Virus record (IMG/VR): IMGVR_UViG_3300032287_003113
Coordinates: 155,880 to 219,879 of that record
Direction: 5' to 3' (one strand)
Length of the DNA stretch: 64,000 nucleotides
The notes under the pieces are model-generated. The model did not search any database. It worked only from the letters and a program-made list of their open reading frames with translations, and was not told the DNA's origin. How positions within the stretch are numbered: the stretch's first letter is position 1; each line of letters begins with the position of its first letter. The translations under genes were made by a program, and so were the position numbers. Shown piece by piece: positions 35 to 44,271 of the stretch.

Positions 35-1081
35 ATGTTGAATAGCGAATACCATGTTGGTATCAACGACAACAAGTTTTGGCGTAAAGACTTGTTAGTT
101 ATGCACCTGTACGATTGCTTAAACACCAACCAACAGCCAGCCCTGCGGGTAACTCCAGAAGGTTCAAGCCTTGCAGGCTGTGGTTTATATAGGTACTTGG
201 ATGCGTTTTGCAAACATACTGGATACGATAAAAAGAACATTAGCATACGCACAGGCAACATGATCGAACAACACCCTGAGTACACAATTATAAAAGATGC
301 CACCGCTTGGTTCGAAGTTCCTATTATGCAACAATGGGCACAAAAAAATCCGATCAACACAGGCACCATGCCTAGATTACACTTTGGACACTTTGTTGGA
401 AAAAGCAATTGGAATAGATTGTGGATTGGTGCTGTGTTGCACAGTAAATACAATGATAAGTTATTTCAAACATATAACACCGGCATTGGTACACACTATC
501 TTACTAAGAATGACGGCCTTTGTGATTTTGTGGGCTTAGAAGATCTGGTCAAAATGGAATGTGATCAAATTGATGTGGCTGTCGAATTTTTAAAGTCTTG
601 TCCAAAGTTTATACCTGAGGACATAGAAGCAATTAAAAATATGTCAACTTACATCAAACAAGACGATTACTACCCTATACAATTACCAGCCAATCTTAAC
701 ATATTGAAATACTATAACAATATATTTGTGGACATTATCCATGAAACATTTGTTCGTGATGAAGTATGTTTTGCTACAGAAAAAACTTGGAGAACAATGT
801 TAGCACGTAGGCCTTTTATTACCATGGGAGGCAGAAATCATTTGGCTAATTTAAAGCGTCTAGGATTCCGTACATTCAATGACATCTGGGATGAAGGTTA
901 CGACGAGTATGGTATGCAGTGGCGTGTTAAAGAAATACTAAAACTAATAGATACTATCAGTTCTTGGTCAGTGGAAAAGATACAACAGGTCTTACAAGAT
1001 ATGCAACCTATACTAGAACACAACTATCAAACTTTTATGACACTAACACATCAAAAAATACAGCGAACATTCAATGACTAA
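35..1081 (+). CDS. GT10 (alpha-1,3-fucosyltransferase)-like glycosyltransferase domain protein
   Basis: C-terminal FVDIIHET...FATEKTWR...PFITMG...LKRLGFRTF...WDEGYD resembles the GT10 E..Y/F.TEK donor motif region; paralogous to 15338..16516. Confidence 0.45.
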   Translation: MLNSEYHVGINDNKFWRKDLLVMHLYDCLNTNQQPALRVTPEGSSLAGCGLYRYLDAFCKHTGYDKKNISIRTGNMIEQHPEYTIIKDATAWFEVPIMQQWAQKNPINTGTMPRLHFGHFVGKSNWNRLWIGAVLHSKYNDKLFQTYNTGIGTHYLTKNDGLCDFVGLEDLVKMECDQIDVAVEFLKSCPKFIPEDIEAIKNMSTYIKQDDYYPIQLPANLNILKYYNNIFVDIIHETFVRDEVCFATEKTWRTMLARRPFITMGGRNHLANLKRLGFRTFNDIWDEGYDEYGMQWRVKEILKLIDTISSWSVEKIQQVLQDMQPILEHNYQTFMTLTHQKIQRTFND

Positions 1082-1910
1082 ATTCCATTTACCTTTTGTA
1101 GAAATGATGGTTACACAATTTTGTAATCTAAGCTGTGTTGGCTGTAGTAACTATGCTGACCTAAAACACACAGGTTATGTTCCTTGGGCAGATGGTCGGC
1201 GTGAAATAGAATCGTGGCTACCACGCATGACAATTGAAGACTTTGGTATCATGGGTGGCGAGCCCCTGATCAATCCCGAACTTAAACAATGGATACGTGG
1301 CTTGCGTGAGTTATTACCCACAAGCCCCATACGCTTTAGCACCAATGGCGAATTGCTAGATCGACATTTAGATGTGCTAGAAACAGCACACGAAGTGGGC
1401 AACTTTGTTTTTAAGATCACTGTACACCAACACAGCGAGCGTGTAGAACGTGTCATTGCTAAAATCTTCTCAATGTACAAGTGGGAACCTGTGTACGAAT
1501 ATGGCATCTATCGTTACAAAACCACAAACGGATTAAGATTTCAGGTCAATCGTCCGCTGACATTTATCAAGTATTATAAGAATGATTACGCCAACATGAT
1601 GCCGTTCAATTCCAATCCTGTGGATAGTTTCAATATTTGTATGCAACAACGATGTCCACTCATGTTCAATGGACGTATGTACAAGTGTAGTACACTAGGC
1701 GGATTGGAACAAACACTAGATCGTTTTAGTAACACCGACCCTGCATGGGAGCCATACAAAGGCAAATACATTACACCTACGAGCCCAGATGCAGATATTG
1801 CGGCGTTCTTAAACAATTATGGTCGTCCACATCAAGTGTGTACAATGTGTCCTACCGCCCAGGATGACGAAAGTGTTATTTTACATTATAATAACGTAAT
1901 AACAAAATGA
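1074..1910 (+). CDS. Radical SAM protein with C-terminal SPASM/twitch-like cysteines
   Basis: CNLSCVGC (CxxxCxxC), MGGEP, FSTNG; C-terminal C..RCP...YKC...CTMCP. Confidence 0.85.
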   Translation: MTKFHLPFVEMMVTQFCNLSCVGCSNYADLKHTGYVPWADGRREIESWLPRMTIEDFGIMGGEPLINPELKQWIRGLRELLPTSPIRFSTNGELLDRHLDVLETAHEVGNFVFKITVHQHSERVERVIAKIFSMYKWEPVYEYGIYRYKTTNGLRFQVNRPLTFIKYYKNDYANMMPFNSNPVDSFNICMQQRCPLMFNGRMYKCSTLGGLEQTLDRFSNTDPAWEPYKGKYITPTSPDADIAAFLNNYGRPHQVCTMCPTAQDDESVILHYNNVITK

Positions 1911-2788
1911 CAAGATTCTTTGCCTTCGGGTGCTCCTTTACTAACTCTAAAAATCCTACTTGGGCTGACATAGTGGCGCACGAGTACAACCATTACCAAA
2001 ACTGGGGACAGGCTGGTGCAGGTAATAGTTTTATATTCTACAGTCTAATGGAATGTAACAAGCGTAATCAGATTACTCCGGACGATGTAGTAATGATCAT
2101 GTGGAGCAGCATTGGTAGAGAAGATCGTTATGTTGGAGGAGAATGGTTGACTCCTGGTAGTATATACAATCAACAAGATTATGATGAGAACTTTGTAAAG
2201 AAGTTTACAGATCCAACAGGATACTTGTTACGAGATGCAGCACACTTGGCTGGTGCTAAAGCCATATTAGATAATATTGGGTGTCGGTATTATTTTTTTA
2301 GTATTGTTCCGTTTAATGTTCCAGACGATAACGTTTTTAAAATCTTTAGCATAGATAATAAAATATTAAATGTTTATGCTGAAGAATTTCGATCTGTGCG
2401 TCCCAGTGTATACGAAGTTGTCTTTGATCACGACTGGTACAGCCGGGCCGGCATTAAACAAGAAGACAAGCTCAAAGAAGAATACGAAATTAAACGTGGT
2501 AATGATTGGCCCACATGGGATAAGTTTATAATACAAGACTTCGGCGGTGTACCCAAAGATATTAAAGATGAAATAAACAACCAACACGAGTTTACCAACA
2601 GATATTTGCGTAGGTATGACACACATCCAACTCCAGCAGAATATTTAGAATATATCACACGAGTAGCACCAGACATAGAAGTATCCTCTGCCACACAAGA
2701 TTGGGTAGCAACAGTGACTGATAGATTAATCAAACACCAAGACTTAACCAAACTTTGGAAACCTAATAAAAAGCCTGCGAGATTCTAA
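1907..2788 (+). CDS. SGNH/GDSL-like hydrolase or acyltransferase
   Basis: N-terminal FGCSFT, G.AGAGNSFI block, C-terminal DTHP. Confidence 0.5.
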   Translation: MTRFFAFGCSFTNSKNPTWADIVAHEYNHYQNWGQAGAGNSFIFYSLMECNKRNQITPDDVVMIMWSSIGREDRYVGGEWLTPGSIYNQQDYDENFVKKFTDPTGYLLRDAAHLAGAKAILDNIGCRYYFFSIVPFNVPDDNVFKIFSIDNKILNVYAEEFRSVRPSVYEVVFDHDWYSRAGIKQEDKLKEEYEIKRGNDWPTWDKFIIQDFGGVPKDIKDEINNQHEFTNRYLRRYDTHPTPAEYLEYITRVAPDIEVSSATQDWVATVTDRLIKHQDLTKLWKPNKKPARF

Positions 2789-4170
2789 TGACCAAATCAA
2801 CATTTATGACAGCCGCAGAAAAGATGAAGGAACTATTGGGCCCGAGTCTTTGCCTGGCCAAATGGAAACAGGTTAGCCTGCATCTAGCTACTGGTATGAC
2901 CAACAGTTGTTACCATCCACCCTTACATGAAATAGATCCTATAGCATTAAAAGACAATCCCGGCGCACTACATAATACAGCACACAAAAAAGATCAACGT
3001 GTGATCATGCTCAAGAACGAACGCCCTACGGAATGTAATTATTGCTGGACACAAGAGGACATGGGCAATCTCAGTGATCGTCATTACAGATCAGGAGAAC
3101 CCTGGGCCGCCGACGACTACAATGCAATTAAAGCCAGCACAGGTACGGAAGATTGGATACCCAGTTATGTTGAAGTTAATTTTAATCACGTGTGTAATCT
3201 CAAGTGTAGCTATTGTAGTCCGCAGTTCTCTAGTACCTGGATGCAAGAAACTGACTATTATGGTGCCTATCCCACAAGCACTCCGCATAACGATCCTGCT
3301 CACTTCGCTGGTCGTCGCAGGCCTATACCGGTCAGCTACGATAATCCATATGTGGATGCATTCTGGGAATGGTGGCCTGAGCTGTATCCGCACCTGAAAC
3401 ATTTCCGTATGACCGGTGGCGAGCCGCTAATGGACAAGAATACTTATAAGGTATTTGATTATGTGTTGGCACTACCAAATCCAGAACTACACTTGGACGT
3501 GACCAGCAACTTTAGTGTTGACGATCGTTTATTTGACAAGTATCTGGGTTATGTCAAACAGTTATGTAACACACAGATAGAACACTTTATGCAGTACGTG
3601 AGTTTGGATAGTGGTAAACCCAGGCATGCAGAATACATTAGACACGGATTAAATTTTGCCAGAATGACTGATAATGTAAATCGTTTCTTAACAGGCGTTC
3701 CCTACCGTAATAGTCTAACATTTATCATTACCATGAACAATCTAAGTGTGTTGGGCCTACAGCGACAACTGGAATGGATACTTGATCTCCGAAGCACACA
3801 TAGTAAAACCTATCAACGTGTTTGGTTTGATACTCCCCTGCTACGTACACCCACTTGGCAAAGCGTACAAATACTGCCCGAAGTCTACGTTGGTGTGTTA
3901 GAACGTGTGGCCGACTGGATGGAACTACAGTTAGAAACAGCAGATAGACCATTTCAGGGATTCAAAGACTACGAAGTACAGCGTATGCGCCGTGATATAG
4001 ATTGGATGAAAGCAGGTCGCAATTTGGATCCAGAATATGTTAAACTGCAACGTGCAGATTTTTATCGTTTCTTTAACGAGCACGACAAACGACGCAAAAC
4101 TGACTTTTTAAAAACTTTTCCAGAAATGACAGAATTTTGGAACGAATGTAAGTACCATGCCCAGAATTAA
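2788..4170 (+). CDS. Radical SAM protein with N-terminal twitch-like domain
   Basis: N-term CLAKW..SCYH..CNYCW; core CNLKCSYC-SPQFSSTW; TGGEP. Confidence 0.85.
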   Translation: MTKSTFMTAAEKMKELLGPSLCLAKWKQVSLHLATGMTNSCYHPPLHEIDPIALKDNPGALHNTAHKKDQRVIMLKNERPTECNYCWTQEDMGNLSDRHYRSGEPWAADDYNAIKASTGTEDWIPSYVEVNFNHVCNLKCSYCSPQFSSTWMQETDYYGAYPTSTPHNDPAHFAGRRRPIPVSYDNPYVDAFWEWWPELYPHLKHFRMTGGEPLMDKNTYKVFDYVLALPNPELHLDVTSNFSVDDRLFDKYLGYVKQLCNTQIEHFMQYVSLDSGKPRHAEYIRHGLNFARMTDNVNRFLTGVPYRNSLTFIITMNNLSVLGLQRQLEWILDLRSTHSKTYQRVWFDTPLLRTPTWQSVQILPEVYVGVLERVADWMELQLETADRPFQGFKDYEVQRMRRDIDWMKAGRNLDPEYVKLQRADFYRFFNEHDKRRKTDFLKTFPEMTEFWNECKYHAQN

Positions 4171-5506
4171 CAACGAAACTGATTTAGAGTACAAACGCAG
4201 AGTGATTGACATCAAGTCGGACAGCTTCTGTGCGGCCAAGTGGTACAATGCCACCATATGGCTAGGCTCGGGGCAAACCACCAGTTGTCATCATCCCCTG
4301 CCGCATCAAGTCAGTGTAGCTGAAGTAGAAGCGAACCCCAAAGCCTTACACAACACCCCAAAGAAAAAAGCCGAACGTGCTCAAATGCAACGAGGAGAAC
4401 GTCCCAGCGGTTGCGAATACTGCTGGAAAATAGAAGACATCGGTCGCGACAACATTAGCGATCGTGTTTACAAAACAGTCATATATGATGACAAGGATTT
4501 GGATTATGCTTTTCAAACTCCAGCAAATGAAGATGTGGATTTACAAACACTTGAAATTGCCTTTGACCGCACCTGCCAGTTCGCTTGCTCTTATTGCAAC
4601 CCGGCGTTTAGTAGCACTTGGGTCAAGGACATTAGGAATAATGGTGCTTATACCAATCTTGTCAGCGATGGCCGCAATCACTTTACTCACGCTCATGACG
4701 GCAGTCAGCTATACCGGTTTGGAGAAACGAATCCGTATGTTGAAGCCTTCCACAAATGGTGGGAAACAGACTTACATAGAACGTTGAAAGAGTTACGTAT
4801 CACTGGGGGCGAGCCATTGATGAGTGCAGAAACTTGGAAGTTGATTGATTGGTTTAAAACTAACAAAGGCAAAAGTTTTACACGTCTTGCTATCAACAGT
4901 AACTTAGGCACTGAAGTAGACATTGATCGTTTACTTGCCGCCATTGATGGTGTAGAAGTTGACCTATATACCAGCAATGAATCAATAGGCTTGCAGGCCG
5001 AATACATTAGAGATGGTCTTGTGTTTGACGACTGGGCTAACAATGTAGAACGTTTGCTAGATTCGGGTAAGTTTCGTGGCCTGCATGTCATGTGTACTAT
5101 TAATGCATTGTGCTTGGATACACTAGACAGCTTTCTTGAAATGGTATATAACTGGAAACTTGAGTACGGCACGGATGCCATTAACTTCTCGCTGAATATA
5201 TTACGTTTTCCAAGTTTTCAAAGTCCTCTGGTATTGCCAGACAACATACGAACACAATACAGAACACAATTAAGTGACTTCTATAAAACACACAAAGACA
5301 CTGGGGTGCTACATGGTTTTGAGATTGATCAATTAAAACGCCTGATTGATTATCTTGATGTTGTTATAACTCCACACACGGGTGCCATGGAACAATCTAT
5401 CTTACAACACGATTTTAAAAACTTCTTCTCACAATACGATCAACGTCGTGGTAAGAATTTTGTAGAGACGTTTCCTAATTTAACAGAATGGTATAATACA
5501 CTATGA
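4157..5506 (+). CDS. Radical SAM protein with N-terminal twitch-like domain
   Basis: N-term CAAKW..SCHH..CEYCW; core CQFACSYC-NPAFSSTW; TGGEP. Confidence 0.85.
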   Translation: MPRINNETDLEYKRRVIDIKSDSFCAAKWYNATIWLGSGQTTSCHHPLPHQVSVAEVEANPKALHNTPKKKAERAQMQRGERPSGCEYCWKIEDIGRDNISDRVYKTVIYDDKDLDYAFQTPANEDVDLQTLEIAFDRTCQFACSYCNPAFSSTWVKDIRNNGAYTNLVSDGRNHFTHAHDGSQLYRFGETNPYVEAFHKWWETDLHRTLKELRITGGEPLMSAETWKLIDWFKTNKGKSFTRLAINSNLGTEVDIDRLLAAIDGVEVDLYTSNESIGLQAEYIRDGLVFDDWANNVERLLDSGKFRGLHVMCTINALCLDTLDSFLEMVYNWKLEYGTDAINFSLNILRFPSFQSPLVLPDNIRTQYRTQLSDFYKTHKDTGVLHGFEIDQLKRLIDYLDVVITPHTGAMEQSILQHDFKNFFSQYDQRRGKNFVETFPNLTEWYNTL

Positions 5507-6834
5507 CCAAAGAATTTTATAACAAGGGTTATGACTATATGGCACGTAAACCATATTTTATTGAACTCGAACAGTTGAATGACTCTCAGCAAGACTTATT
5601 AATAAAAAGCGAAACATTTTGCATGATGCCTTGGGTACACATGCATGCCTTCCCAGACGGTCGTGCATATCCTTGCTGTGTGGCAGACTATTGGCATCCT
5701 GTGGGGGACCTACGTAAAAGCACTATGGAACAAGTTTGGAATCAAGAACCTTATCGTAACTTGCGTAAGAATATGGTTAGCGAAACCAAGAGCAAAGAGT
5801 GTACCAAGTGCTACGAACAAGAACGCAATGGATTTTTTAGTATGCGTAACGATGCCAATCGTAACTACGGACATCATATAGGAGAAGTAAATGAAACCAA
5901 AGAAGATGGAACCAATCCTAAGTTCAAAATACGTTATTGGGACGTTCGTTTTAGTAACCTTTGTAACTTCCGTTGTCGCAGCTGTGGGCCTATTTTTAGC
6001 AGTAATTGGTATCAAGATCACGTAAAAATGTACGGCAAGAAACCTGATGTGTTAGGCCGTGACATGGCTGTGATTGAATATACCACAGGCAACGAAGATG
6101 ACATGATTGCACAAATGATGCCACACGTTCCACACCTGGAGCAGGTATACTTTGCCGGTGGCGAGCCCTTGATCATGAAAGAACATTATTACTTGCTTGA
6201 GAAGTTGATTGAAGCAGGTAAAACTGATGTGCGTATCCAATATAACACAAACTTTAGTGAACTGGCATTTAAGGACAAGCACGTATTTGAATATTGGCGA
6301 CATTTTAAAAATGTCAGTGTAGGTGCCAGTTTAGATGCCAGCGGAGCTAGAGCGGAGCTGATGCGTAAAGGAACAGATTGGACACAGGCAGTAGATAATC
6401 GTCGTCGCATGATAGCAGAAGTGCCACATGTGGATTTTTACATTAGTGCCACAGTTAGTTCAATGAACGTGTTGCATGTATTAGACTTTCATAGAGAATG
6501 GACCGAGCTTGGATTGATCAAAGCCAAGGACTTTAATGTAAACATTTGCCAAAGCCCGGAATGGTATCGAGTAGATATCTTTCCAGAACAGTTTAAACAG
6601 GATGTTATTGTGCCCGCCTACGAGCAACACATTGAGTGGTTAACACCGCAAGACAATCTTAAACGTGCTACCAATGGATTTCGTAGCACTCTCAAATTCA
6701 TGAACAGCACAGATCAAAGTCATTTGTGGCCACGCTTTGTTGAGGAGTGTGCCAAACTAGACGCTGTACGTCGAGAAGATTTTTGGGCAACATTCCCTGA
6801 ATTAGCCAGCTTACGAGATTATGAACCTACCTAA
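5503..6834 (+). CDS. Radical SAM protein with N-terminal twitch-like domain
   Basis: N-term CMMPW..PCC..CTKC; core CNFRCRSC-GPIFSSNW; AGGEP; YNTN. Confidence 0.85.
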   Translation: MTKEFYNKGYDYMARKPYFIELEQLNDSQQDLLIKSETFCMMPWVHMHAFPDGRAYPCCVADYWHPVGDLRKSTMEQVWNQEPYRNLRKNMVSETKSKECTKCYEQERNGFFSMRNDANRNYGHHIGEVNETKEDGTNPKFKIRYWDVRFSNLCNFRCRSCGPIFSSNWYQDHVKMYGKKPDVLGRDMAVIEYTTGNEDDMIAQMMPHVPHLEQVYFAGGEPLIMKEHYYLLEKLIEAGKTDVRIQYNTNFSELAFKDKHVFEYWRHFKNVSVGASLDASGARAELMRKGTDWTQAVDNRRRMIAEVPHVDFYISATVSSMNVLHVLDFHREWTELGLIKAKDFNVNICQSPEWYRVDIFPEQFKQDVIVPAYEQHIEWLTPQDNLKRATNGFRSTLKFMNSTDQSHLWPRFVEECAKLDAVRREDFWATFPELASLRDYEPT

Positions 6835-8038
6835 CACGATATGTATGTTGCCGTGGGTCAGCATTGAAGCTAGTCCAATGGGCACCACACGTCCTTGCTG
6901 TATGGCATATGATGAGATTACCGATGAGTCAGGCAAGAAGTACGACTTAAACGAAACTAATCTTGAAGTGGCATACCACAGTGAGTATATGCAGGACTTA
7001 CGACGTCAGTTTCGTTGTGGAGAAAAACCTGCAACCTGTAATCGTTGTTGGGAAGAAGAAGCCGCAGGTAGGGACAGTAAACGTATACACAGCCAAGTAA
7101 GATTAAAAGAATTATACAAACAAGTAGACTGGGCTAATGACGATCCTGATCAACTATGGTTTGTTGATTTAAAACTAGGTAACATCTGTAACTTAAAATG
7201 TCGTATATGTGGTTCTTGGTCCAGTAGTAAGTGGGCTGAAGAAGAACTTGCTTACATGCCCAAAGACTTTAACAAAAAAGAGCACATTGCCTACACTTGG
7301 CTACGGCAAGGTGCATGGCCACGCAAGACCACAACCTTCTGGGATAACATGCGTGACTTGTTGCCCAACATCCGGTACTTTGAATTTACCGGTGGCGAGC
7401 CCTGGATGATACAAGAACACTTTGATTTATTACAGTACGCAGTAGATCAAGGATACAGTAAAAATATTGATATACACTACAACACCAATGCTACACAACA
7501 ACCTAGTACTCCACAAATTTTAATGTGGAAAGAGTTTGGCCGAGTTGACATTGCCTTTAGTATTGACAACGTAGGCTCACGTTTTGAATATGAACGCTAC
7601 GGAGCCAATTGGCTATTGGCAAACAAGATCATTGATGATGTGCATTTTACACAGGCTGTCGACGCTCCTAATATTACCACACAGTTATGCTTTACTATCA
7701 ACATACAAAACGTGTATTACCTAGACGAACTACTAGCCTGGGCGGATACAAAAAGATTTGGCGACGTCTATTTTAATATGATGCATAGCCCAGATCACAT
7801 GAGCATACAAATGATGACTCCGGCAGCACAGGAGTTGGTACTAAACAAATTAAAAACAACATTTTGGAAAAATAACAAATATCAACAAGAAATTGATAGT
7901 GTAATTAAATTTATTGAACTTGGCACAGGCAGTGATGGCCGAGAGTTTTTGTTTAAGATGCAACGTACAGATGAACATCGCAAACAAAACTTTATGGATA
8001 CACATGAAGAAATAGCACGGGCAATGGGTTATGAATAA
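6821..8038 (+). CDS. Radical SAM protein with N-terminal twitch-like domain
   Basis: N-term CMLPW..PCC..CNRCW; core CNLKCRIC-GSWSSSKW; TGGEP; YNTN. Confidence 0.85.
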   Translation: MNLPNTICMLPWVSIEASPMGTTRPCCMAYDEITDESGKKYDLNETNLEVAYHSEYMQDLRRQFRCGEKPATCNRCWEEEAAGRDSKRIHSQVRLKELYKQVDWANDDPDQLWFVDLKLGNICNLKCRICGSWSSSKWAEEELAYMPKDFNKKEHIAYTWLRQGAWPRKTTTFWDNMRDLLPNIRYFEFTGGEPWMIQEHFDLLQYAVDQGYSKNIDIHYNTNATQQPSTPQILMWKEFGRVDIAFSIDNVGSRFEYERYGANWLLANKIIDDVHFTQAVDAPNITTQLCFTINIQNVYYLDELLAWADTKRFGDVYFNMMHSPDHMSIQMMTPAAQELVLNKLKTTFWKNNKYQQEIDSVIKFIELGTGSDGREFLFKMQRTDEHRKQNFMDTHEEIARAMGYE

Positions 8039-9338
8039 ACCGGCAACACTATGCATGGCACCATGGACACACACTTATCTTAGTCCACAAACAGAACGAC
8101 GCTTGTGCTGTGCCAGCCGTGAACCTGCACAAAACTTTGAACAGTATATAGATACATCGGCCGGCACAGGACGATACATTCCCATCACATTAGATGAGCA
8201 TTGGAACAGTGAACACATGCGTAGTGTGCGCCGTAGAATGATGGCTGGAGAAACCTTGCCCGAGTGTGAAGTGTGTAACAACAAACTATTAAACACAGAC
8301 GTTTACCGTAGTTATTTTAATCAATTGTTTGGAGATAAGTATTTACAGGCCCGAGAGCATACTGATGCAACAGGCTACACGACAATGAAGCCAGTTTCGT
8401 GGGATTACAGGTTCAGCAATCTCTGTAATTTTAAATGCCGCATGTGCGGCGACATGTTGTCGAGTGCTTGGGAGAGCGAGCAACGCCAACACGGAATGAT
8501 CGACTTTACAAATCCAAAGAACAATTGGATGCGTCCTGAAGTCAAAGAGCAAATAGAACAGTTTCAAGACACCCAGATAGAGCAAGAGTTTGCAGATGCC
8601 GTGGAACAGCATCGAGTCGAGGAAGTCTACTGGGTTGGTGGTGAACCGTTGATGTATGAGCAACACTGGCGCTATATGCAACGGATAATTGAATTGGGAG
8701 ATGGACCAAATGTTTACGCTCGATACAACACTAATCTTAGTCGTATTAGTTATAGAGGCGTTAATTTGTTTAGCGATATTTTATGCCGGTTACGTGACTG
8801 GCAAATCTGTGCAAGCATCGACGGCACGGGCAGAATTGGAGAGTATATTAGATCAGGTCTTGATTTTGATCAGTGGCTTGCGAACATCCGCCAAGGACTT
8901 GCGTACCACCATCACCGCCGCCAGATCCGTCTGGACTTCACTCTTACTACACCAGGACTCTTTGAAGTACAAGCGATACAAACGCTCGCCCAAGAACTCG
9001 GAGTAGATGTTTTAGCAAAGGTGGTGTTCTCGTTTAGTCCGGACATCATTATGAGCCCGTTGGCACTACCTAAAGATGTACTGCATCCTTGGATAGACGA
9101 AATTGTGAATGGCACTCCTGGGGAACGTCCTCTTACCGGCCCGTTACGGGACATACTGATTCAACTCAAAACAAGACCCACTTTTGCCGAACAATGGCCT
9201 GACTCGTATCAAGCAGGCCTACGCAAGGGCAAACAACGAATTCTACAGTTGGAAAAAATCAGAAACGACACATATACGTTTAGAGATATAATGTACTCGA
9301 GACCTGCGGCACTAGAATGGTATGACTCAATCAATTAA
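8031..9338 (+). CDS. Radical SAM protein with N-terminal twitch-like domain
   Basis: N-term CMAPW..LCC..CEVC; core CNFKCRMC-GDMLSSAW; VGGEP; YNTN. Confidence 0.85.
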   Translation: MNKPATLCMAPWTHTYLSPQTERRLCCASREPAQNFEQYIDTSAGTGRYIPITLDEHWNSEHMRSVRRRMMAGETLPECEVCNNKLLNTDVYRSYFNQLFGDKYLQAREHTDATGYTTMKPVSWDYRFSNLCNFKCRMCGDMLSSAWESEQRQHGMIDFTNPKNNWMRPEVKEQIEQFQDTQIEQEFADAVEQHRVEEVYWVGGEPLMYEQHWRYMQRIIELGDGPNVYARYNTNLSRISYRGVNLFSDILCRLRDWQICASIDGTGRIGEYIRSGLDFDQWLANIRQGLAYHHHRRQIRLDFTLTTPGLFEVQAIQTLAQELGVDVLAKVVFSFSPDIIMSPLALPKDVLHPWIDEIVNGTPGERPLTGPLRDILIQLKTRPTFAEQWPDSYQAGLRKGKQRILQLEKIRNDTYTFRDIMYSRPAALEWYDSIN

Positions 9339-10407
9339 AGTAATCTTACGCAACCCTTTAAACTACACAGATCAAGTTGATTATACAATTACGGCTGCAG
9401 ATAACCAATTGGCACGGGATTGGGTATCAGCATTAAAATTAGAACTATCGAGTGGTCGGCTATTAGAAAAGAATTTTTGTTTTATGGGTTTTCCCCGTAC
9501 AGCCCGCACACTGGAATATCTTTGTGACGAACTCAATCAAGCAGTAGATATCATTAATAGTTCTGGCATAGAATATCATATTCCTGAAGTGTTCTCCCCT
9601 GACACGGTACGTGGATTTGATTATGCAGATAATGGTGTCAATCATGCTGTAATGAATCAACTACACAATCACTTTGAGCGATTGCAAGGAACTGTTTGGG
9701 GTTTAAGTGATTATTACCGACGTGCCAACTACGAAACAAAGTATGCTATCCGACAGTTAAACAACATCTGTCACGAGATGGAAAACCTAATACTAAGTCA
9801 GCGTAAAGAAGCCACAGCACCTTATTGGGTACGTCCAAGCCAAATTACTACATTTCTACAAGCCGAGCGTTATGACCTCAAAGGCGAACATCGCACAGGG
9901 TTTGCCATCAATGGATATGATCGTGTACTAGGCGGAGTATATATGCATTGGACACAGATAGGCAAAACCTTGTTTGAAGTGTTCCGCGACGAAGGAGCAC
10001 CAGAACTTACAGCAACAACGTGTGAGGCCATCACAGAGTTAAAATACTACTCAGGCGAATTTGATGTAGAGTGGGGTAACGATGTGACCTTACTAGGCGA
10101 CAACAATCCTTGGCACACAAAGGAGCAGATAGAGTTTCGCAAGTGGCTAATAGCCAACAATCGAGATCCTGCAGATCCTGCATTAAGTCTAGGATACTTG
10201 CCTGTAGGACAAGTAGAATTGACAAAGAGTTTTGGTACAGCAGATTATCAACAGATATGGAACATACTTGGCAATCATTTGGACATATATCAAATAGAAG
10301 CAGGAGACGTATCCGCAACATTTGATTATTGCTGGACCGATGCCACGTACAAACAACAACAAATAGATCGGATGAGGCCGGGATATGACTATAGTAGCCG
10401 GGGGTGA
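9322..10407 (+). CDS. Hypothetical protein (361 aa)
   Basis: Long ORF overlapping both neighbours in the operon; no motif recognised. Confidence 0.7.
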   Translation: MTQSIKVILRNPLNYTDQVDYTITAADNQLARDWVSALKLELSSGRLLEKNFCFMGFPRTARTLEYLCDELNQAVDIINSSGIEYHIPEVFSPDTVRGFDYADNGVNHAVMNQLHNHFERLQGTVWGLSDYYRRANYETKYAIRQLNNICHEMENLILSQRKEATAPYWVRPSQITTFLQAERYDLKGEHRTGFAINGYDRVLGGVYMHWTQIGKTLFEVFRDEGAPELTATTCEAITELKYYSGEFDVEWGNDVTLLGDNNPWHTKEQIEFRKWLIANNRDPADPALSLGYLPVGQVELTKSFGTADYQQIWNILGNHLDIYQIEAGDVSATFDYCWTDATYKQQQIDRMRPGYDYSSRG

Positions 10408-11188
10408 TAGTTTTGTTTTTGGTCACGAATTAAAAGACTGCGGCAAGAACCCTAGTAAAAATACCTTTACGGCTTTATTGGGCGCCGACGTTTGTGTAGC
10501 TCGTGGCGGATACTCCAATAGTGCTATTGCTAGAACAGTGATGTCTGAATGCAGTCGACATCAAGACAATCTTGGCGTTATTGTTAGTTGGACTTTTTCT
10601 AGTAGGTTTGAATTTAGATTTGCCTACAGTACTGGACAAGTTAGCAGCCCCTGGTACAGCATCAATGCCTGGACCATAGAAGATAATTTTGAAAATATCA
10701 AAAGTGAGTTTGTTACAGAAAACGAAGCAATATTTAACAGCCAAGTAGAAACTATAAAACGGGCACAGAGCACAGGGGTACAGGACTTTGCAAAAACATT
10801 TTATAAACATGTGGGCAGTACAGAGTACTGGGAAATATATACTACACTTAAAGAAATTGTATTATTACAAAATTATTTGAAGCTACGCAATATACCTTAT
10901 ATGTTTACCTGTGCTGATAACCAAATTGTAAAAAATTATACTGTAGACAATGCAGACGTACATATTTCTGCATTATACAATCAAATTGATTTTGATCATT
11001 GGTTTTGGTTCCCGCCGGGCACCGGAGCAAATCAAACCGAAACCCCAAGAGGTTTTTATCAGTGGGCCGTGGAGAATAAATACCCAGTAGGCACCACACA
11101 TCCGCTGGAACAAGCACACATAGACGCATCCACGTTGATGCAAGGAAAATTCAATGAATTGGTTACGAAACATTTACAATCGAATTAA
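10385..11188 (+). CDS. SGNH/GDSL-like hydrolase or acyltransferase
   Basis: AGGDSF, GGYSNSAIAR, C-terminal THPLEQAH. Confidence 0.55.
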   Translation: MTIVAGGDSFVFGHELKDCGKNPSKNTFTALLGADVCVARGGYSNSAIARTVMSECSRHQDNLGVIVSWTFSSRFEFRFAYSTGQVSSPWYSINAWTIEDNFENIKSEFVTENEAIFNSQVETIKRAQSTGVQDFAKTFYKHVGSTEYWEIYTTLKEIVLLQNYLKLRNIPYMFTCADNQIVKNYTVDNADVHISALYNQIDFDHWFWFPPGTGANQTETPRGFYQWAVENKYPVGTTHPLEQAHIDASTLMQGKFNELVTKHLQSN

Positions 11189-11255
11189 ACTAGAATTACG
11201 CTATCGCAAGAAGTTAAAAGAGCTTCGTAAACGAGATCCATTTATCTATAAATGA
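11154..11255 (+). CDS. Small basic protein MNWLRNIYNRIKLELRYRKKLKELRKRDPFIYK (33 aa; below ORF-track cutoff)
   Basis: AAGGA SD at 11142-11146, ATG 11154, TGA overlaps next ATG (ATGA); fills the gap 11188-11252. Confidence 0.7.
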   Translation: MNWLRNIYNRIKLELRYRKKLKELRKRDPFIYK

Positions 11256-11896
11256 TTTATTGTATCGGAGACAGTTTTACCTACGGGGAAGAACTTGCTG
11301 ACCGTAATACAGCATGGCCGGCAATATTGGGTAAAAAATTAAATCAACCTGTGACCAATTGGGGCAAACCAGCAACTGGAAACCATCGCATGGTCAAGCG
11401 TACAATGGATGCTGTATTTGCGGGTGCTTCGTTGATTGTCGTTGGTTGGTCAGATCCAGCTAGACAAGAGTTTGCTGATGATATCAGTATTACTGACTTA
11501 TGGGCAGGTAGGGATTATCGTAGAATGCAAACCTGTACTGATCATCGACGTGATTTAATCAAGTATATGACAGCGTATGACGTTCCGGGATATTACTACG
11601 CACAGTGGATACGACAAATCGTTTTAACACAGACTTTTTGTCGTGCAAATGCCGTTCCTTGTGTGATGTTTAGTGCGTGTAATGCTGAAAGTTGGAATAT
11701 TGATTATATAAAAAAACAAAGTCAACACGAGCATTTAACGCGACACGTAGATGTAGACACATACATTGGTTGGCCATATTCAGGATCAACGGAATGGACA
11801 TATGGTACACCGCATGGCCCGGGCGGTCATCCTCTGGAACAGGGTCATGAGATTATAGCAGAAAAAATTTATGAGCATATTAGCCGTCGGGTGTAG
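11252..11896 (+). CDS. SGNH/GDSL-like hydrolase or acyltransferase
   Basis: IGDSFT, GKPATGN, C-terminal GGHPLEQGH. Confidence 0.55.
   Translation: MIYCIGDSFTYGEELADRNTAWPAILGKKLNQPVTNWGKPATGNHRMVKRTMDAVFAGASLIVVGWSDPARQEFADDISITDLWAGRDYRRMQTCTDHRRDLIKYMTAYDVPGYYYAQWIRQIVLTQTFCRANAVPCVMFSACNAESWNIDYIKKQSQHEHLTRHVDVDTYIGWPYSGSTEWTYGTPHGPGGHPLEQGHEIIAEKIYEHISRRV
11855..11883 (+). repeat. 29-nt dual-coding junction repeat, copy 1
   Basis: ATAGCAGAAAAAATTTATGAGCATATTAG; 27/29 identical to 12471..12499. Confidence 0.85.
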
Positions 11897-12521
11897 TTTT
11901 ACAGCAGGTGCAGAATTACCCAATCCTGCAGAATCTGCTTGGCCCAACCTAATAGGAAAATTAAATAATCGTCCAGTAAAAAATTTGGGACTTGGCGGCG
12001 CATCCAATGATCGTACATTTAGATTGGTTATAGAGGAAACTGCTCAACAACGATTTGATTTGGTTGTTATACAGTGGACTGAACCTAGTCGTATGGAAAT
12101 ATGGAATGCCCGCCGCCGCAATACCATGGATGTAAATATAGGAAAGTTGCATTCAAACATGTTTGAGATGTCTTGGCTCGATACTTACTATTGCAATCAC
12201 TACGATGATTTCCACGCTCATCGTAAATGGGCCGCACAGATATTGTCCTTGCAAGGATATTTAAAATCAATCGATCAGCCCTATGTTATGGTCAGTTTAA
12301 ATGGACTTGATCAAAGACTTTACACGGGTGCATGGAGTAGTGTAAAATACTTGTGGGACGGTGTTGACACCATGCATTACCCAGGTTGGCCGTTTGAGGG
12401 AATTTATATGTGGCAAGGTGATTGTCCTAGAGCTCCCGGCGGGCATCCATTGGAGCTGGGACACAAAAGAATAGCAGAAAAAATAAATGAGCATATTAGG
12501 AATCTCGGCTGGCTTCCATGA
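11871..12521 (+). CDS. SGNH/GDSL-like hydrolase or acyltransferase (tandem paralog of 11252..11896)
   Basis: VGCSFT, GLGGASN, C-terminal GGHPLELGH. Confidence 0.55.
   Translation: MSILAVGCSFTAGAELPNPAESAWPNLIGKLNNRPVKNLGLGGASNDRTFRLVIEETAQQRFDLVVIQWTEPSRMEIWNARRRNTMDVNIGKLHSNMFEMSWLDTYYCNHYDDFHAHRKWAAQILSLQGYLKSIDQPYVMVSLNGLDQRLYTGAWSSVKYLWDGVDTMHYPGWPFEGIYMWQGDCPRAPGGHPLELGHKRIAEKINEHIRNLGWLP
12471..12499 (+). repeat. 29-nt dual-coding junction repeat, copy 2
   Basis: ATAGCAGAAAAAATAAATGAGCATATTAG. Confidence 0.85.
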
Positions 12522-13968
12522 CGCCGCCATTTCGTTAATTAACTCCGATGGAGAAATAGTATTTGCTGGGCATTCAGAACGCTACAGCAAACGTAAGAAC
12601 GATCCAAATCTTTGTATTAGCCTATTAGAAGAGATATGCGATTACCCCATTGATACTATCGCATACTATGAACGACCCTGGAACAAACAATTACGTCAAT
12701 TGTACAGTGGGCAAGGAATAGAGTGGAACAAACTTTTTGTTAAACAAATTGTTCGGGATCAATTGCATGGCTGGTTGGCGCATCCTCCTAAAAACATAAA
12801 AACTTATAATCATCATTTGAGTCACGCCGCAGCAGGATTCCAAACAAGTGTGTTTGACAAAGCCACAGTGGTAGTAATTGATGCCATTGGGGAATGGGAC
12901 ACTATTAGTATTTGGGGTGCTCACTATGTGGATGGTCAGGCCAAATATCACAGACTGTGGGGACAGCGGTATCCACATAGTGTTGGACTGTTTTATTCAG
13001 CAATGACTCAGCGTGTGGGACTAAAACCCAACGAAGAAGAGTACATATTAATGGGCATGAGTGCATATGGCAAAGATAATGTTGCTGACGTTATAAAAAA
13101 TGCTGTAATTAACAATGAGTGGGATTTGACTTTTAAACAAAATTTACACACTGGCGTTGACACGGAGTTTTTACGTGGAATCTCAGACATGGATATTGCC
13201 ACATCTAGCCAGGCTTTTACAGAAAATCTGATATATAATGTTATGCGTCGAGCCAAAGACTTTGGCTGGAGCAGAAATTTGGTTTACATGGGCGGAGTTG
13301 CCCTAAATTGTTTAGCTAATCGTAATCTTGGTGATTATTTTGAAAAAATTTGGATCATGCCTAATCCTGGTGACGCTGGTAGCAGTCTTGGCGCCGCTGC
13401 CCTTGCCTACGGTAAAAGAATTGACTTCAACAACGCATACCTTGGTCACTGCATTAGCGGCGACTATCCCGTCAATGCCATCCTTGATTGTTTACTCCAC
13501 GATAAAATCGTTGGAGTTGCTTCCGGCCGAGCCGAATTTGGACCTCGTGCCCTTGGGAACAGAAGTCTCCTCGCCGATCCGCGTGGATCAGATATAAAAG
13601 ATCGTGTCAACCAAATCAAACGTCGTCAAAAGTTTAGGCCATTTGCGCCGGTTATCTTGGCTGAGCAAGCTGAGTTATTTTTTGATATGCCCCGTGGTTT
13701 CAGTGATAGTCCATATATGCAGTCAGTCGCCCATTGCCGGCATCCTGACACTTACCCTGCTATTGTGCATCACGACGGCACTAGCCGAGTACAAACGGTT
13801 ACAGATAATGGCTCAGGCATTAGAGAACTCCTAGAAAAATGGTATGTAATGACCGGCTGTCCCATGTTGCTCAACACCAGTCTCAACATTAGAGGTGAAC
13901 CCATGGTCAACGATCGTGCCGACGCAGATAGATTTGAACACTTATATGGAGTACGTGTATGCTCGTGA
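12487..13968 (+). CDS. Carbamoyltransferase, NodU/CmcH family
   Basis: GISAGFHDAA, ERYSKRK, HHLSHAA, DAIGE, GGVALNC, GDAGSSLGAA, EFGPRALGNRS, RPFAP, LNTSLN. Confidence 0.9.
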   Translation: MSILGISAGFHDAAISLINSDGEIVFAGHSERYSKRKNDPNLCISLLEEICDYPIDTIAYYERPWNKQLRQLYSGQGIEWNKLFVKQIVRDQLHGWLAHPPKNIKTYNHHLSHAAAGFQTSVFDKATVVVIDAIGEWDTISIWGAHYVDGQAKYHRLWGQRYPHSVGLFYSAMTQRVGLKPNEEEYILMGMSAYGKDNVADVIKNAVINNEWDLTFKQNLHTGVDTEFLRGISDMDIATSSQAFTENLIYNVMRRAKDFGWSRNLVYMGGVALNCLANRNLGDYFEKIWIMPNPGDAGSSLGAAALAYGKRIDFNNAYLGHCISGDYPVNAILDCLLHDKIVGVASGRAEFGPRALGNRSLLADPRGSDIKDRVNQIKRRQKFRPFAPVILAEQAELFFDMPRGFSDSPYMQSVAHCRHPDTYPAIVHHDGTSRVQTVTDNGSGIRELLEKWYVMTGCPMLLNTSLNIRGEPMVNDRADADRFEHLYGVRVCS

Positions 13969-24417: not shown

Positions 24418-24599
24418 TATTCTACTCCAAAATGTTTTAAAATATTGTCACTGCTCTGATAAGGTTCGGCGGTGTGTGCAATATCAGCACACTCCCGCAC
24501 AATGGCCTGGGCAAACTCTTCAACCTTGAGTCGCCATATGGGGCTATGAGCAATGGTAAAGTGAGTGTCCTCGGCTATGCGTTGGATATTTTCGTTCAT
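24417..24599 (-). CDS. Hypothetical protein (60 aa)
   Basis: Start moved to ATG 24599, which overlaps the upstream TGA (ATGA). Confidence 0.55.
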   Translation of the reverse strand: MNENIQRIAEDTHFTIAHSPIWRLKVEEFAQAIVRECADIAHTAEPYQSSDNILKHFGVE

Positions 24600-25840: not shown

Positions 25841-25864
25841 TCTGTTCGCTCCTGTATTATATAT

Positions 25865-27526: not shown

Positions 27527-27570
27527 CACAGGCTCCTAAAAATTACTACAAAATTAACTACTATAGAACT

Positions 27571-43920: not shown

Positions 43921-44271
43921 GTGATCTTTTTTAATCTCACGTACTGCACACTCTAGTCGTTCAGCAATAGCGTTTTTAATGGCAATACGTTTGTTGTTGT
44001 GATCTCTAATGGCAATGGCACGTCGACCAATTTCTTCTAGCCCTAGTTCTTGTTCACGCCCAGTTTTAAGCAAGGACTCTAGTTCCCATATCTCGTTGTG
44101 TATGCCCACAAGATTCATATATAAATCTTCAATTTTTTCTATGTCGTGTGCTATCGCTTGATTCATGTACCAAGTGAGTTCTTCAGCATTGGCTCCTCCG
44201 GTGCGTTTAAACTTAACGTCGGCGATGGCCAGGCGATCAAATAATTCAATAACAGGAAATGTAGGAGTCAT
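43909..44271 (-). CDS. Hypothetical helical protein
   Basis: ATGA-coupled to the upstream radical SAM gene. Confidence 0.65.
   Translation of the reverse strand: MTPTFPVIELFDRLAIADVKFKRTGGANAEELTWYMNQAIAHDIEKIEDLYMNLVGIHNEIWELESLLKTGREQELGLEEIGRRAIAIRDHNNKRIAIKNAIAERLECAVREIKKDHLSE

What the first reader, a model, noticed from the sequence alone, without database searches (positions are those of the whole stretch)
1074..9338. Tandem array of radical SAM enzymes with inverted domain order
Five adjacent paralogs (2788-9338) and a sixth at 51343 carry the twitch/SPASM-like Cys set (CxxxW...C(C/xH)...CxxC) N-terminal to the CxxxCxxC core, each followed by a conserved SSxW. Canonical SPASM/twitch domains are C-terminal, as in 1074..1910 and 44268..45296 here. 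Nine radical SAMs in 64 kb of phage DNA, diverged but retained, suggest sequential tailoring of one substrate, for example successive sugar dehydrogenation or epimerisation as in the twitch enzymes BtrN/NeoN (inference).
Basis: partly seen in the sequence, partly recalled or inferred. Interest (0 to 1): 0.75.

Follow-up and report, generated by a model that had tools for sequence, protein, structure and literature searches.

The report
Phage array of N-terminal-twitch radical SAMs
A freshwater jumbo phage carries a conserved set of very old, strongly selected radical SAM enzyme genes whose extra iron-sulfur domain sits at the front instead of the back; the family already has a curated name, but no known reaction, substrate or solved structure.

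Summary
Five overlapping genes (2788-9338, + strand) and a sixth (51343-52476, - strand) are full-length members of NCBIfam NF033640, 'N_Twi_rSAM', at 242-398 bits against a cut-off of 170. So the inverted domain order is real but already curated.

A profile of the N-terminal domain finds one significant solved protein, the C-terminal twitch domain of BtrN (E 1e-6). The four invariant Cys align with the four Cys of that domain.

The window is the end of a 220 kb, about half-complete contig of a T4-like jumbo phage from freshwater lakes. The contig holds 12 such genes in at least five places.

- The paralogs are only 16-45% identical.
- The five array genes fall in five old subfamilies. Four have a supported counterpart in one chromosomal eight-gene array of a Bacteriovoracaceae bacterium.
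- Orthologs show dN/dS of 0.04-0.08.

The family is very large (about 1,500 clusters at 50% identity) and looks mostly viral. I found no paper on it.

The function is unknown. My best-supported guess (about 0.4) is stepwise radical tailoring of a sugar-type substrate. This rests on the BtrN-like domain, sugar-nucleotide, carbamoyl- and GDSL-type neighbours, and one fusion to a glycosyltransferase. Peptide or protein, nucleotide and lipid substrates remain open.

The parts
2788..4170 (+). NT1, an N-terminal-twitch radical SAM (460 aa)
   Evidence: NF033640 at 306 bits, full length. CNLKCSYC at residue 136. Its subfamily clade with a Bacteriovoracaceae member has support 1.0. dN/dS 0.038 against the L085 ortholog.
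4157..5506 (+). NT2, an N-terminal-twitch radical SAM (449 aa)
   Evidence: NF033640 at 295 bits. 33% identical to NT1. The ortholog in L085 is 73% identical and synonymous sites are saturated. Clade support 0.82.
5503..6834 (+). NT3, an N-terminal-twitch radical SAM (443 aa), the copy closest to the family model
   Evidence: NF033640 at 398 bits; Pfam SPASM at residues 40-104, E 9e-13. AlphaFold2 model with pLDDT 94.3. More than 120 clusters (90% identity clustering) hold orthologs 75-93% identical. dN/dS 0.041.
5605..5877 (+). Twitch domain of NT3 (residues about 35-125; Cys 40, 58/59, 100 and 103)
   Evidence: The domain profile hits BtrN residues 163-242 at E 9.7e-7, the only significant PDB hit. 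Fold match to BtrN 163-247.
5962..5985 (+). CxxxCxxC motif of NT3 (C154, C158, C161) for the SAM-binding cluster
   Evidence: Invariant in 99 of 99 family members.
6821..8038 (+). NT4, an N-terminal-twitch radical SAM (405 aa)
   Evidence: NF033640 at 330 bits. dN/dS 0.068. The clade with the bacterial member is weakly supported, 0.23.
8031..9338 (+). NT5, an N-terminal-twitch radical SAM (435 aa)
   Evidence: NF033640 at 289 bits. dN/dS 0.084. Clade support 1.0.
51343..52476 (-). NT6, an N-terminal-twitch radical SAM (377 aa), a solitary copy
   Evidence: NF033640 at 242 bits; SPASM at residues 15-76, 32.4 bits. Its closest paralog lies outside the window at contig position 52586-53740 (36% identity).
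9322..10407 (+). Conserved 361-aa protein of unknown family that closes the array
   Evidence: Overlaps NT5 by 17 nt. Homologs 40-55% identical sit at the same position in related phage contigs L001, L002, L003, L008 and L009, and the L085 ortholog is 90% identical with dN/dS 0.052. No Pfam, NCBIfam, PHROG or Atlas lead.
1074..1910 (+). Short radical SAM (278 aa) of another family, just upstream
   Evidence: PF04055 at 52 bits; it is not an N_Twi member (31 bits, core region only). Its C-terminal Cys pattern looks twitch-like but is not significant. The gene is conserved in L085, dN/dS 0.049.
1907..2788 (+). 293-aa protein with an N-terminal GCSFT motif (SGNH/GDSL-like by motif only)
   Evidence: No family hit. 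This slot varies: L085 has three other genes here.
35..1081 (+). 348-aa protein of a phage-only family, possibly a glycosyltransferase (lead only)
   Evidence: Paralog at 15338-16516. Several copies are interleaved with the rSAM genes in L008 and L009. The nearest named Atlas cluster is GT10 at 0.79, and structural neighbours are fused to a methyltransferase or an NDP-sugar epimerase. No PDB or Pfam hit.
10385..12521 (+). Three GDSL/SGNH-like genes (10385-11188, 11252-11896, 11871-12521; the last two match DUF6071)
   Evidence: Pfam DUF6071 and Lipase_GDSL_2. The GDSF and GCSF motifs are visible in the translations. Syntenic in L001, L002 and L085.
12487..13968 (+). NodU/TobZ-type carbamoyltransferase
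   Evidence: Carbam_trans_N and Carbam_trans_C, E 1e-38 and 3e-48. Syntenic in related phages. The same family occurs next to bacterial N-twitch genes, 3 of 132 neighbours.
44268..45296 (-). Radical SAM (342 aa) of another family, next to GalE (45323-46318)
   Evidence: PF04055 at 44 bits. Its best named model is a viperin-like one at 54 bits, far below that model's cut-off of 180.

Best explanation
The six genes encode working radical SAM enzymes of the curated family NF033640.

Each has two parts. The core is a normal SAM-cleaving partial barrel with a CxxxCxxC cluster and a GGE motif. In front of it, not behind it, sits a BtrN-type twitch domain whose four invariant cysteines should fully ligate a second [4Fe-4S] cluster.

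Inferred chemistry, by analogy with BtrN and other enzymes with a fully ligated auxiliary cluster:
- 5'-deoxyadenosyl radical abstracts a hydrogen atom from the substrate.
- The substrate radical then passes an electron to the auxiliary cluster.
- The net result is a two-electron oxidation, or an epimerisation or rearrangement built on it.

The five adjacent genes are not recent copies. They represent five old subfamilies that travel together in related phages; four of the five have a supported counterpart in a bacterial chromosome. Each is under strong purifying selection. This suggests they perform different, non-redundant steps or positions of one multi-step process.

The most likely substrate class is a sugar, aminosugar or cyclitol unit of a glycan or small glycoconjugate that the phage makes or remodels during infection. 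Neighbouring aminotransferase, NDP-sugar epimerase/dehydratase, carbamoyltransferase, methyltransferase and GDSL-type enzymes would act on the same product.

What is shown: family membership, twitch homology, cysteine conservation, age of the paralogs, selection, and synteny.
What is inferred: cluster binding, the chemistry, the substrate class, and that the paralogs work on one product.
For: - **Membership.** 242-398 bits against a cut-off of 170, full length.
- **Twitch homology.** Pfam SPASM hits the N-terminus. A profile of the N-domain alone finds only BtrN residues 163-242 in the whole PDB, at E 9.7e-7, with the four invariant Cys on the four Cys of that segment. Modelled alone (pLDDT 97), the N-domain has BtrN as its best fold match: TM 0.52, and VIA model residues 5-96 on BtrN 163-247. 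BtrN's auxiliary cluster has four Cys ligands and is proposed to be the electron acceptor (PMC9012708).
- **Core.** The model has pLDDT 94 and matches SPASM/twitch-class rSAM cores at Z 11-12.7, including the sugar enzymes BlsE and DesII.
- **Old, retained set.** Paralogs are 16-45% identical. Ortholog dN/dS is 0.04-0.08. Gene ends overlap by 4-17 nt. The five subfamilies recur in L001, L002, L008, L009 and L085. In a Bacteriovoracaceae chromosomal array they recur with support 1.0, 0.82, 0.81, 0.23 and 1.0.
- **Sugar context in the phage.** DegT aminotransferase, two NDP-sugar epimerase/dehydratases, GalE, a carbamoyltransferase, methyltransferases, several GDSL/DUF6071 genes, and a cytidylyltransferase-cupin fusion beside the second array.
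- **Context in bacteria.** Among 132 neighbours in 17 loci: PhyH 10, GDSL 4, carbamoyltransferase 3, glycosyltransferase families 2 each.
- **Fusion.** One family member is fused to a GT2 glycosyltransferase.
Against: - No reaction, substrate or cluster was tested.
- The fold match of the N-domain is weak in absolute terms (Z 3.9, Foldseek E 0.08).
- The structural matches of the core do not separate sugar enzymes from peptide enzymes. SkfB, CteB, anSME and SuiB score as high as BlsE and DesII.
- Other fusions are to TPR, Sel1 and ankyrin repeats, which point to protein partners.
- The phage and bacterial arrays share no non-rSAM gene.
- The 12 copies are scattered, some between uvsX and the gp46/gp47-like genes.
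- No DOI synthase and no clear glycosyltransferase turned up in the half of the genome that is held.
- The isolate bacterium Agaribacillus aureus has a single copy in an uninformative neighbourhood.
Confidence: 0.4

Rival explanations
1. The enzymes modify peptides or proteins, for example cross-links, epimerisation or Cα/Cβ oxidation of phage structural or host proteins, as most SPASM/twitch enzymes do. Each paralog would recognise a different protein target.
For: SkfB, CteB, anSME, SuiB and EpeE are among the best structural matches of the core. Family members are fused to TPR, Sel1 and ankyrin repeats, which are typical protein-binding modules. In relatives the array lies next to large fibre-like structural genes (Gly_rich_2, Peptidase_G2). 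The phage and bacterial arrays share no small-molecule pathway genes.
Against: There is no recognisable RiPP recognition element and no conserved short precursor ORF. The array genes overlap with no room between them. Only one auxiliary cluster is present, whereas most peptide-modifying enzymes have two. The sole sequence-level PDB relative of the extra domain is BtrN, a small-molecule enzyme.
Confidence: 0.25
2. The enzymes act on nucleotides or nucleic acids. They could hypermodify phage DNA or tRNA, or make nucleotide analogues used in conflicts with the host or with other phages.
For: Copies sit between uvsX and the gp46/gp47-like genes, and near thymidylate synthase, DHFR and dCMP deaminase. 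The core gives weak hits to MoaA, viperin and QueE models. The same window carries a separate FolE-QueD-QueE 7-deazapurine cluster.
Against: Those model hits cover only the generic core and lie far below their cut-offs. T4-like phages routinely place accessory genes between core genes. Four of the five subfamilies have a supported counterpart in one array of a bacterial chromosome, among housekeeping genes. Bacterial neighbours are tailoring enzymes, not nucleic-acid enzymes.
Confidence: 0.12
3. The enzymes modify lipids or isoprenoids, forming C-C bonds or oxidising unactivated carbons as Tes/GDGT-MAS and HpnH do.
For: GDGT-MAS is the top Foldseek hit of the whole model, and its alignment runs into the N-terminal region. 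GDGT-MAS has an N-terminal auxiliary-cluster domain (PMC9433317). PhyH (10) and UbiA prenyltransferases (3) are among the bacterial neighbours.
Against: TM is only 0.33. The N-terminal cluster of GDGT-MAS uses a different motif (C73, C77, C80 and a His). PhyH-family enzymes are general hydroxylases. No lipid genes lie near the phage arrays.
Confidence: 0.08

Closest known systems
NCBIfam NF033640, 'N_Twi_rSAM' (twitch domain-containing radical SAM protein; a subfamily model with no assigned function)
   Same: All six window genes, and ten of twelve in the contig, score above its curated cut-off over the full model length. The architecture is the same: twitch domain first, then the radical SAM core.
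   Different: Nothing structural differs; these are members. What this locus adds is the scale: 12 diverged copies in 220 kb, a five-subfamily cassette, and a viral setting.
BtrN (2-deoxy-scyllo-inosamine dehydrogenase, butirosin pathway; PDB 4M7S and 4M7T), the archetypal twitch enzyme
   Same: The auxiliary-cluster domain is homologous at sequence level (E 9.7e-7) with the same four-Cys layout, C-x17-C-x40-45-C-x2-C, and the same fold. Four Cys ligands imply a closed cluster, as in BtrN.
   Different: In BtrN the domain follows the core (residues 163-250 of 250). Here it precedes it. The cores are not specifically similar, since BtrN is not among the top 50 whole-model matches. These proteins are about 180 residues longer and have an extra C-terminal helical region. 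No aminocyclitol pathway genes were found.
DesII and BlsE (radical SAM enzymes acting on TDP-aminosugar and cytosylglucuronic acid)
   Same: BlsE is the best structural match of the core (Z 12.7; DesII Z 11.9). Both act on sugars, which agrees with the gene neighbourhood.
   Different: There is no sequence-level similarity. The scores are no better than for peptide-modifying enzymes.
GDGT-MAS / Tes (tetraether lipid synthase, PDB 7TOM)
   Same: It is a solved radical SAM enzyme with an auxiliary [4Fe-4S] domain in front of the core, and it is the top Foldseek hit.
   Different: Its N-terminal cluster has Cx3Cx2C plus His ligation and is not a twitch. It also carries a rubredoxin domain and a C-terminal cluster. 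TM is only 0.33.
Sugar- and amino-acid-tailoring gene clusters of jumbo cyanophages (Iyer et al. 2021, PMC7824862)
   Same: Carbamoyltransferases, dioxygenases, methyltransferases and NDP-sugar enzymes are clustered in T4-like jumbo phages. Those authors predicted that they decorate capsular polysaccharide or make a secondary metabolite. The window also has the MoxR-vWA pair that marks their group 2.2.
   Different: That paper does not contain the words 'radical' or 'SPASM'. Here the dominant component is the N-twitch rSAM family.

Membership tests
Radical SAM superfamily | CxxxCxxC motif for the SAM-binding [4Fe-4S] cluster | tested here: met
   Present in all six genes. Invariant in 99 of 99 relatives.
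Radical SAM superfamily | GGE SAM-binding motif and a partial TIM-barrel core | tested here: met
   GGEP219-222 is invariant. The model (pLDDT 94) aligns to solved rSAM cores at Z 11-12.7 over about 220 residues. Pfam PF04055 gives 20-41 bits, over the 29.5 cut-off only for NT6 and just under it for the others.
Radical SAM superfamily | Reductive cleavage of SAM to 5'-deoxyadenosine | not testable with these tools
   Needs an anaerobic enzyme assay.
NF033640 N_Twi_rSAM | Whole-protein score over the curated cut-off (170 bits), covering the model end to end | tested here: met
   306, 295, 398, 330, 289 and 242 bits, with model positions 1-4 to 386-398 of 398 covered.
Twitch domain (one auxiliary cluster) | Homology to the auxiliary-cluster domain of a solved twitch enzyme | tested here: met
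   The N-domain profile against all PDB sequences finds only BtrN 163-242, E 9.7e-7. BtrN is the best fold match. Pfam SPASM scores up to 48.7 bits.
Twitch domain (one auxiliary cluster) | Conserved Cys ligands for exactly one extra cluster | tested here: met
   Four invariant Cys (40, 58/59, 100, 103) align with the four Cys of the BtrN segment. There are no further invariant Cys, so this is not a two-cluster SPASM domain.
Twitch domain (one auxiliary cluster) | The domain is a C-terminal extension of the core (as the class is defined in PMC9012708) | tested here: not met
   The domain occupies residues about 35-125, ahead of the CxxxCxxC motif at 154-161. It is a permuted arrangement.
Twitch domain (one auxiliary cluster) | Actual binding of a second [4Fe-4S] cluster near the active site | not testable with these tools
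   Model coordinates were not exposed. This needs iron and sulfide analysis, EPR or Mössbauer spectroscopy, or a structure.
BtrN-type radical SAM dehydrogenases | Overall sequence or structural similarity beyond the auxiliary domain, and an aminocyclitol pathway context | tested here: not met
   The full-length protein has no PDB sequence hit. BtrN is absent from the top 50 whole-model matches. No DOI-synthase homolog is present. So it works like BtrN at most; it is not a member.
RiPP-maturing rSAM/SPASM enzymes | Two auxiliary clusters, an N-terminal peptide-recognition domain, and an adjacent precursor peptide gene | tested here: not met
   Only four extra Cys are present. The N-terminus is the twitch domain. 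The overlapping genes leave no room for a short ORF.

The most novel reading that the evidence does not exclude
The five-subfamily cassette of permuted-twitch radical SAM enzymes is a self-contained, still unknown multi-step radical pathway. Four of its subfamilies have a supported counterpart in a chromosomal array of predatory Bdellovibrionota. It would carry out several different C-H functionalisations on one scaffold, and its product (an unusual glycan, glycoconjugate or metabolite) would matter in phage-host or predator-prey interactions. In that case the family, among the largest virus-dominated enzyme families without a known reaction, would hold new radical chemistry.
Probability: 0.3. 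Interest if true: 0.8.

Novelty: new member of a known kind. Interest (0 to 1): 0.6.

Why it matters
- **Size of the gap.** A single-sequence search finds about 1,500 clusters at 50% identity at E below 1e-30. The nearest ESM Atlas clusters are labelled almost wholly viral, although few of their members carry a taxon. Yet the family has no known reaction, no solved structure and no paper that I could find.
- **Commitment by the phage.** This phage gives 12 genes in half a genome to the family and keeps each under strong selection. Near-identical copies of the array occur in lake metagenomes from at least eight studies between 2015 and 2025. That is a sizeable commitment of genes that need iron-sulfur clusters and SAM, and its purpose is unknown.
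- **Value for enzymology.** A natural domain permutation of the twitch module offers a test of what the auxiliary cluster does.
- **Value for phage biology.** Finding the product would show what large aquatic phages build with their tailoring islands.
- **A place to start.** Two cultured phages carry family members: Ralstonia phage RsoM2USA (two copies) and Vibrio phage K566 (about five).

Tried and rejected
- **Megablast of the array against GenBank phages:** no match.
- **Full-length NT3 against PDB sequences:** nothing. Only the domain profile worked.
- **The search for related loci with the six-paralog alignment:** it failed because no stretch was conserved enough. The 99-row alignment worked.
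rejected, because at 16-45% amino-acid identity synonymous sites are saturated. I replaced it with ortholog pairs against L085.
- **Recent tandem duplication:** rejected on identity and on the tree.
- **A single operon for one pathway:** weakened, because copies lie in at least five places.
- **Searches of the contig for PhyH and GT10:** nothing found, but the controls were silent too, so these are inconclusive.
- **DOI synthase:** absent, with working controls.
- **GT2:** only a sub-threshold hit.
- **Promoter and terminator scan:** no more sites than in shuffled sequence.
- **The 361-aa partner protein:** no lead from Pfam, NCBIfam, PHROGs or the Atlas.
- **The 348-aa family:** no PDB sequence relative. 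GT10 stays a lead only.
- **The 'Haliscomenobacter' loci as bacterial context:** rejected. Both contigs carry a gp23 capsid gene, so they are phage contigs binned into the MAG.
- **Exact-sequence look-up of the Gemmatimonadaceae copy:** not on record.
- **Metatranscriptome contigs over parts of the array:** these do not prove transcription.
- **Literature searches for an N-terminal twitch or SPASM domain, or for NF033640:** no paper found.

Full report
**1. What is there**

The region from 35 to about 15,350 is one dense block of + strand genes. Within it lie five ORFs: 2788-4170, 4157-5506, 5503-6834, 6821-8038 and 8031-9338. I call them NT1 to NT5. They overlap one another by 4-14 nt. A sixth ORF, NT6, lies at 51343-52476 on the - strand.

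All six match NCBIfam NF033640, named 'N_Twi_rSAM, twitch domain-containing radical SAM protein'. The matches run over the whole model at 242-398 bits, against a curated cut-off of 170.

Pfam places its SPASM model at the N-terminus and its Radical_SAM model behind it.
- the CxxxW start;
- the PCC or SCxH second cysteine;
- the CxxC pair;
- then CxxxCxxC followed by SSxW.

The inverted order is real. It is also already known to the curators of that model.

**2. Is the N-terminal Cys set a twitch domain?**

Four cysteines are invariant in the six paralogs and in 99 diverse family members: 40, 58/59, 100 and 103 in NT3 numbering.

I built a profile of residues 30-140 from 81 sequences and searched it against every PDB sequence. 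It found one significant protein, BtrN, over residues 163-242, which is its C-terminal twitch domain (E 9.7e-7). In that alignment the four invariant cysteines fall on the four cysteines of the BtrN segment. Counting along the alignment places the first two at C169 and C187 and the last two in its CKNC motif.

Modelled alone, the domain is confident (pLDDT 97.1). Its best fold match is again BtrN:
- Foldseek gives TM 0.52 over 73 columns at 2.5 Å.
- VIA-align puts model residues 5-96 on BtrN 163-247.
- The next matches are PqqE, anSME, TigE and CteB.

The absolute fold scores are weak (Z 3.9). Sequence profile, fold ranking and cysteine register all agree, however.

According to PMC9012708, BtrN's auxiliary cluster has four Cys ligands and a very low potential, and is proposed to accept the electron from the substrate radical. 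The same review defines SPASM and twitch domains as C-terminal extensions. That is the one class feature these proteins do not meet.

An N-terminal auxiliary cluster has one solved precedent, GDGT-MAS. Its motif is different (C73, C77, C80 plus His; PMC9433317).

I could not measure cysteine geometry, because model coordinates are not exposed.

**3. The rest of the protein**

The full NT3 model is confident (pLDDT 94.3, pTM 0.91). Residues about 140-405 align to solved radical SAM cores of the SPASM/twitch class at Z 11-12.7. The matches are BlsE, SkfB, anSME, CteB, DesII, SuiB, MoaA and viperin.

No solved protein matches the whole chain. The full-length sequence has no PDB relative at all. 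The ranking does not separate sugar-acting enzymes from peptide-acting ones.

**4. Genome setting**

The window is the last 64 kb of a 219,879-bp IMG/VR virus record that CheckV rates 51% complete.
- It encodes a T4-type gp23 capsid protein.
- Its family-B DNA polymerase is closest to those of Sinorhizobium phage Phosso (52%) and Agrobacterium phage Atu_ph07 (47%).
- It has the MoxR and vWA-metallopeptidase pair that Iyer et al. use to mark their jumbo-phage group 2.2.

The array occurs almost letter for letter in freshwater and lake metagenomes from at least eight studies, 2015-2025. A few short contigs from one metatranscriptome cover parts of it, which does not prove transcription.

The contig holds twelve N-twitch genes:
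- the six in the window;
- a second group at contig positions 48872-55109, which is interrupted by a uvsX (RecA-like) gene;
- one copy between the gp46-like and gp47-like genes;
- one further solitary copy.

There are nine radical SAM genes in the window only if a sub-threshold QueE-like ORF is counted.

**5. Age and selection**

The paralogs share only 16-45% identity, so dN/dS between them cannot be computed. I compared orthologs instead, using the closest related contig, L085. The values are NT1 0.038, NT3 0.041, NT4 0.068 and NT5 0.084. NT2 is 73% identical, with synonymous sites saturated. There is no relaxed selection.

A maximum-likelihood tree of 83 family members puts NT1 to NT5 in five separate clades. 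Each clade contains the positional orthologs from five related phage contigs. Each also contains one or two members of an eight-gene array in a Bacteriovoracaceae genome. The clade supports are 1.0, 0.82, 0.81, 0.23 and 1.0.

That bacterial array sits between rplU-rpmA-obg-rsfS and lgt. The genome has no gp23, and all eight of its copies lie in this one array.

The two 'Haliscomenobacter' loci are phage contigs binned into a MAG.

Bacterial single copies, including the one in the isolate Agaribacillus aureus, all fall in the NT3-like clade.

The array region is also plastic. L085 has three different genes in place of 1907-2788 and an extra gene between NT4 and NT5. L002 has a sixth rSAM gene.

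**6. How large is the family?**

A single-sequence search of 1.84 billion representatives found 1,491 proteins at E below 1e-30 and 6,019 at E below 1e-10. The word-indexed search found orthologs of NT3 at 75-93% identity in more than 120 clusters, on contigs of up to 366 kb. The nearest ESM Atlas clusters are labelled 93-100% viral, though few of their members carry a taxon.

Among GenBank phages, tblastn with NT3 found only Vibrio phages K566 and K567, Ralstonia phage RsoM2USA and one marine single-virus contig. The family model finds 2 copies in RsoM2USA, about 5 in K566, and none in Phosso or Atu_ph07.

A marine T4-like genome with 12 radical SAM genes was noted in PMC5332604. I found no paper that treats an N-terminal twitch or this family.

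**7. What might it do?**

Evidence pointing to a sugar-type substrate:
- The extra domain resembles BtrN and no other solved protein.
- The phage neighbourhood holds a DegT aminotransferase, an NDP-sugar epimerase/dehydratase, GalE, a NodU/TobZ-type carbamoyltransferase, methyltransferases and at least five GDSL/SGNH-like genes. A cytidylyltransferase-cupin fusion lies beside the second array.
- Among 132 neighbours of bacterial copies, the commonest families are PhyH dioxygenases (10), GDSL (4), ABC transporters (4), carbamoyltransferase (3), UbiA (3), and halogenases and glycosyltransferases (2 each).
- One family member is fused to a GT2 glycosyltransferase.
- The unknown 348-aa family interleaved with the rSAM genes has weak glycosyltransferase-like leads.

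Evidence against that reading:
- Other fusions are to TPR, Sel1 and ankyrin repeats.
- The phage and bacterial arrays share nothing except the rSAM genes.
- No clear glycosyltransferase or cyclitol synthase was found.

I therefore put the carbohydrate-tailoring reading at about 0.4, a peptide or protein substrate at 0.25, nucleotide or nucleic acid at 0.12, and lipid at 0.08. The remainder is unassigned.

I rate the following much higher, around 0.9:
- the proteins are active two-cluster radical SAM enzymes;
- the paralogs are non-redundant.

**8. Verdict**

It belongs to a family that already has a curated name, so the architecture itself is not new. What stays open, and interesting, is the function of a very large, mostly viral enzyme family. 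The evidence here also shows that a fixed set of old subfamilies is inherited together by lake jumbo phages, and that four of the five have a supported counterpart in a predatory bacterium.

Noticed in passing
window 38277-42131 (- strand): A likely 7-deazapurine (preQ0-type) pathway. It has GTP cyclohydrolase I FolE (41295-42131), a QueD-like ORF (39383-39832) and a QueE-like radical SAM (38277-39137) with an unusual Cx3Cx4C motif; only its first 36 residues match the QueE models. A purine phosphoribosyltransferase-like gene (39921-40466) lies beside them. This may mean deazaguanine-modified DNA.
   Followed up: partly
window 1907-2788, 10385-12521, 21264-22049; contig 57792-58556: A second expanded family: at least five or six GDSL/SGNH-like genes (motifs GDSF, GCSF, GDSW; two match DUF6071). 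Most lie next to the radical SAM genes and are syntenic in related phages.
   Followed up: partly
window 35-1081 and 15338-16516; L008 and L009: A phage-only family of 300-400 aa proteins with a conserved 'ET...TEK..KP...PF..G' block. Up to four copies are interleaved with the N-twitch genes in related phages. Elsewhere it is fused to a methyltransferase or an NDP-sugar epimerase. It is possibly a GT10-like glycosyltransferase.
   Followed up: partly
contig 48872-55109 and 116822-118111 (outside the window; loci L087, L089): N-twitch genes flank the uvsX (RecA-like) gene, and one sits between the gp46-like and gp47-like recombination nuclease genes. They behave like accessory inserts between T4 core genes. 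The copy at 54225-55109 is short (294 aa) and lacks the C-terminal helical part.
   Followed up: partly
window 24596-27529 (- strand): A MoxR-type AAA+ ATPase (26420-27529) and a metallopeptidase-vWA protein (DUF2201; 24596-25873). This is the chaperone pair described for group 2.2 jumbo phages.
   Followed up: no
loci L033, L039, L046, L047, L057, L060, L070, L074, L079, L082 (one Elusimicrobia MAG): One MAG holds dozens of N-twitch modules. Many sit inside very long ORFs (600-1,200 aa) arranged head to tail on many contigs. This is a far larger expansion than in the phage, and I do not know what it is.
   Followed up: no
P0121, P0122, P0124, P0126, P0127: Proteins of about 800-1,100 aa that contain two N-twitch radical SAM modules in tandem. 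Neighbouring paralogs have therefore fused more than once, which fits paralogs that work together.
   Followed up: no
window 36610-37572, 46981-47658: Membrane proteins that are unusual for a phage: a TauE/SafE-type sulfite exporter family protein and a Bax inhibitor-1 family protein.
   Followed up: no
L006 (Polynucleobacter MAG contig, 72% identical ortholog) and G001 (Haliscomenobacter MAG): Contigs of this phage lineage are binned into freshwater bacterial MAGs. This is a weak hint about hosts, and a warning that the 'bacterial' copies of this family in MAG collections are partly phage.
   Followed up: partly
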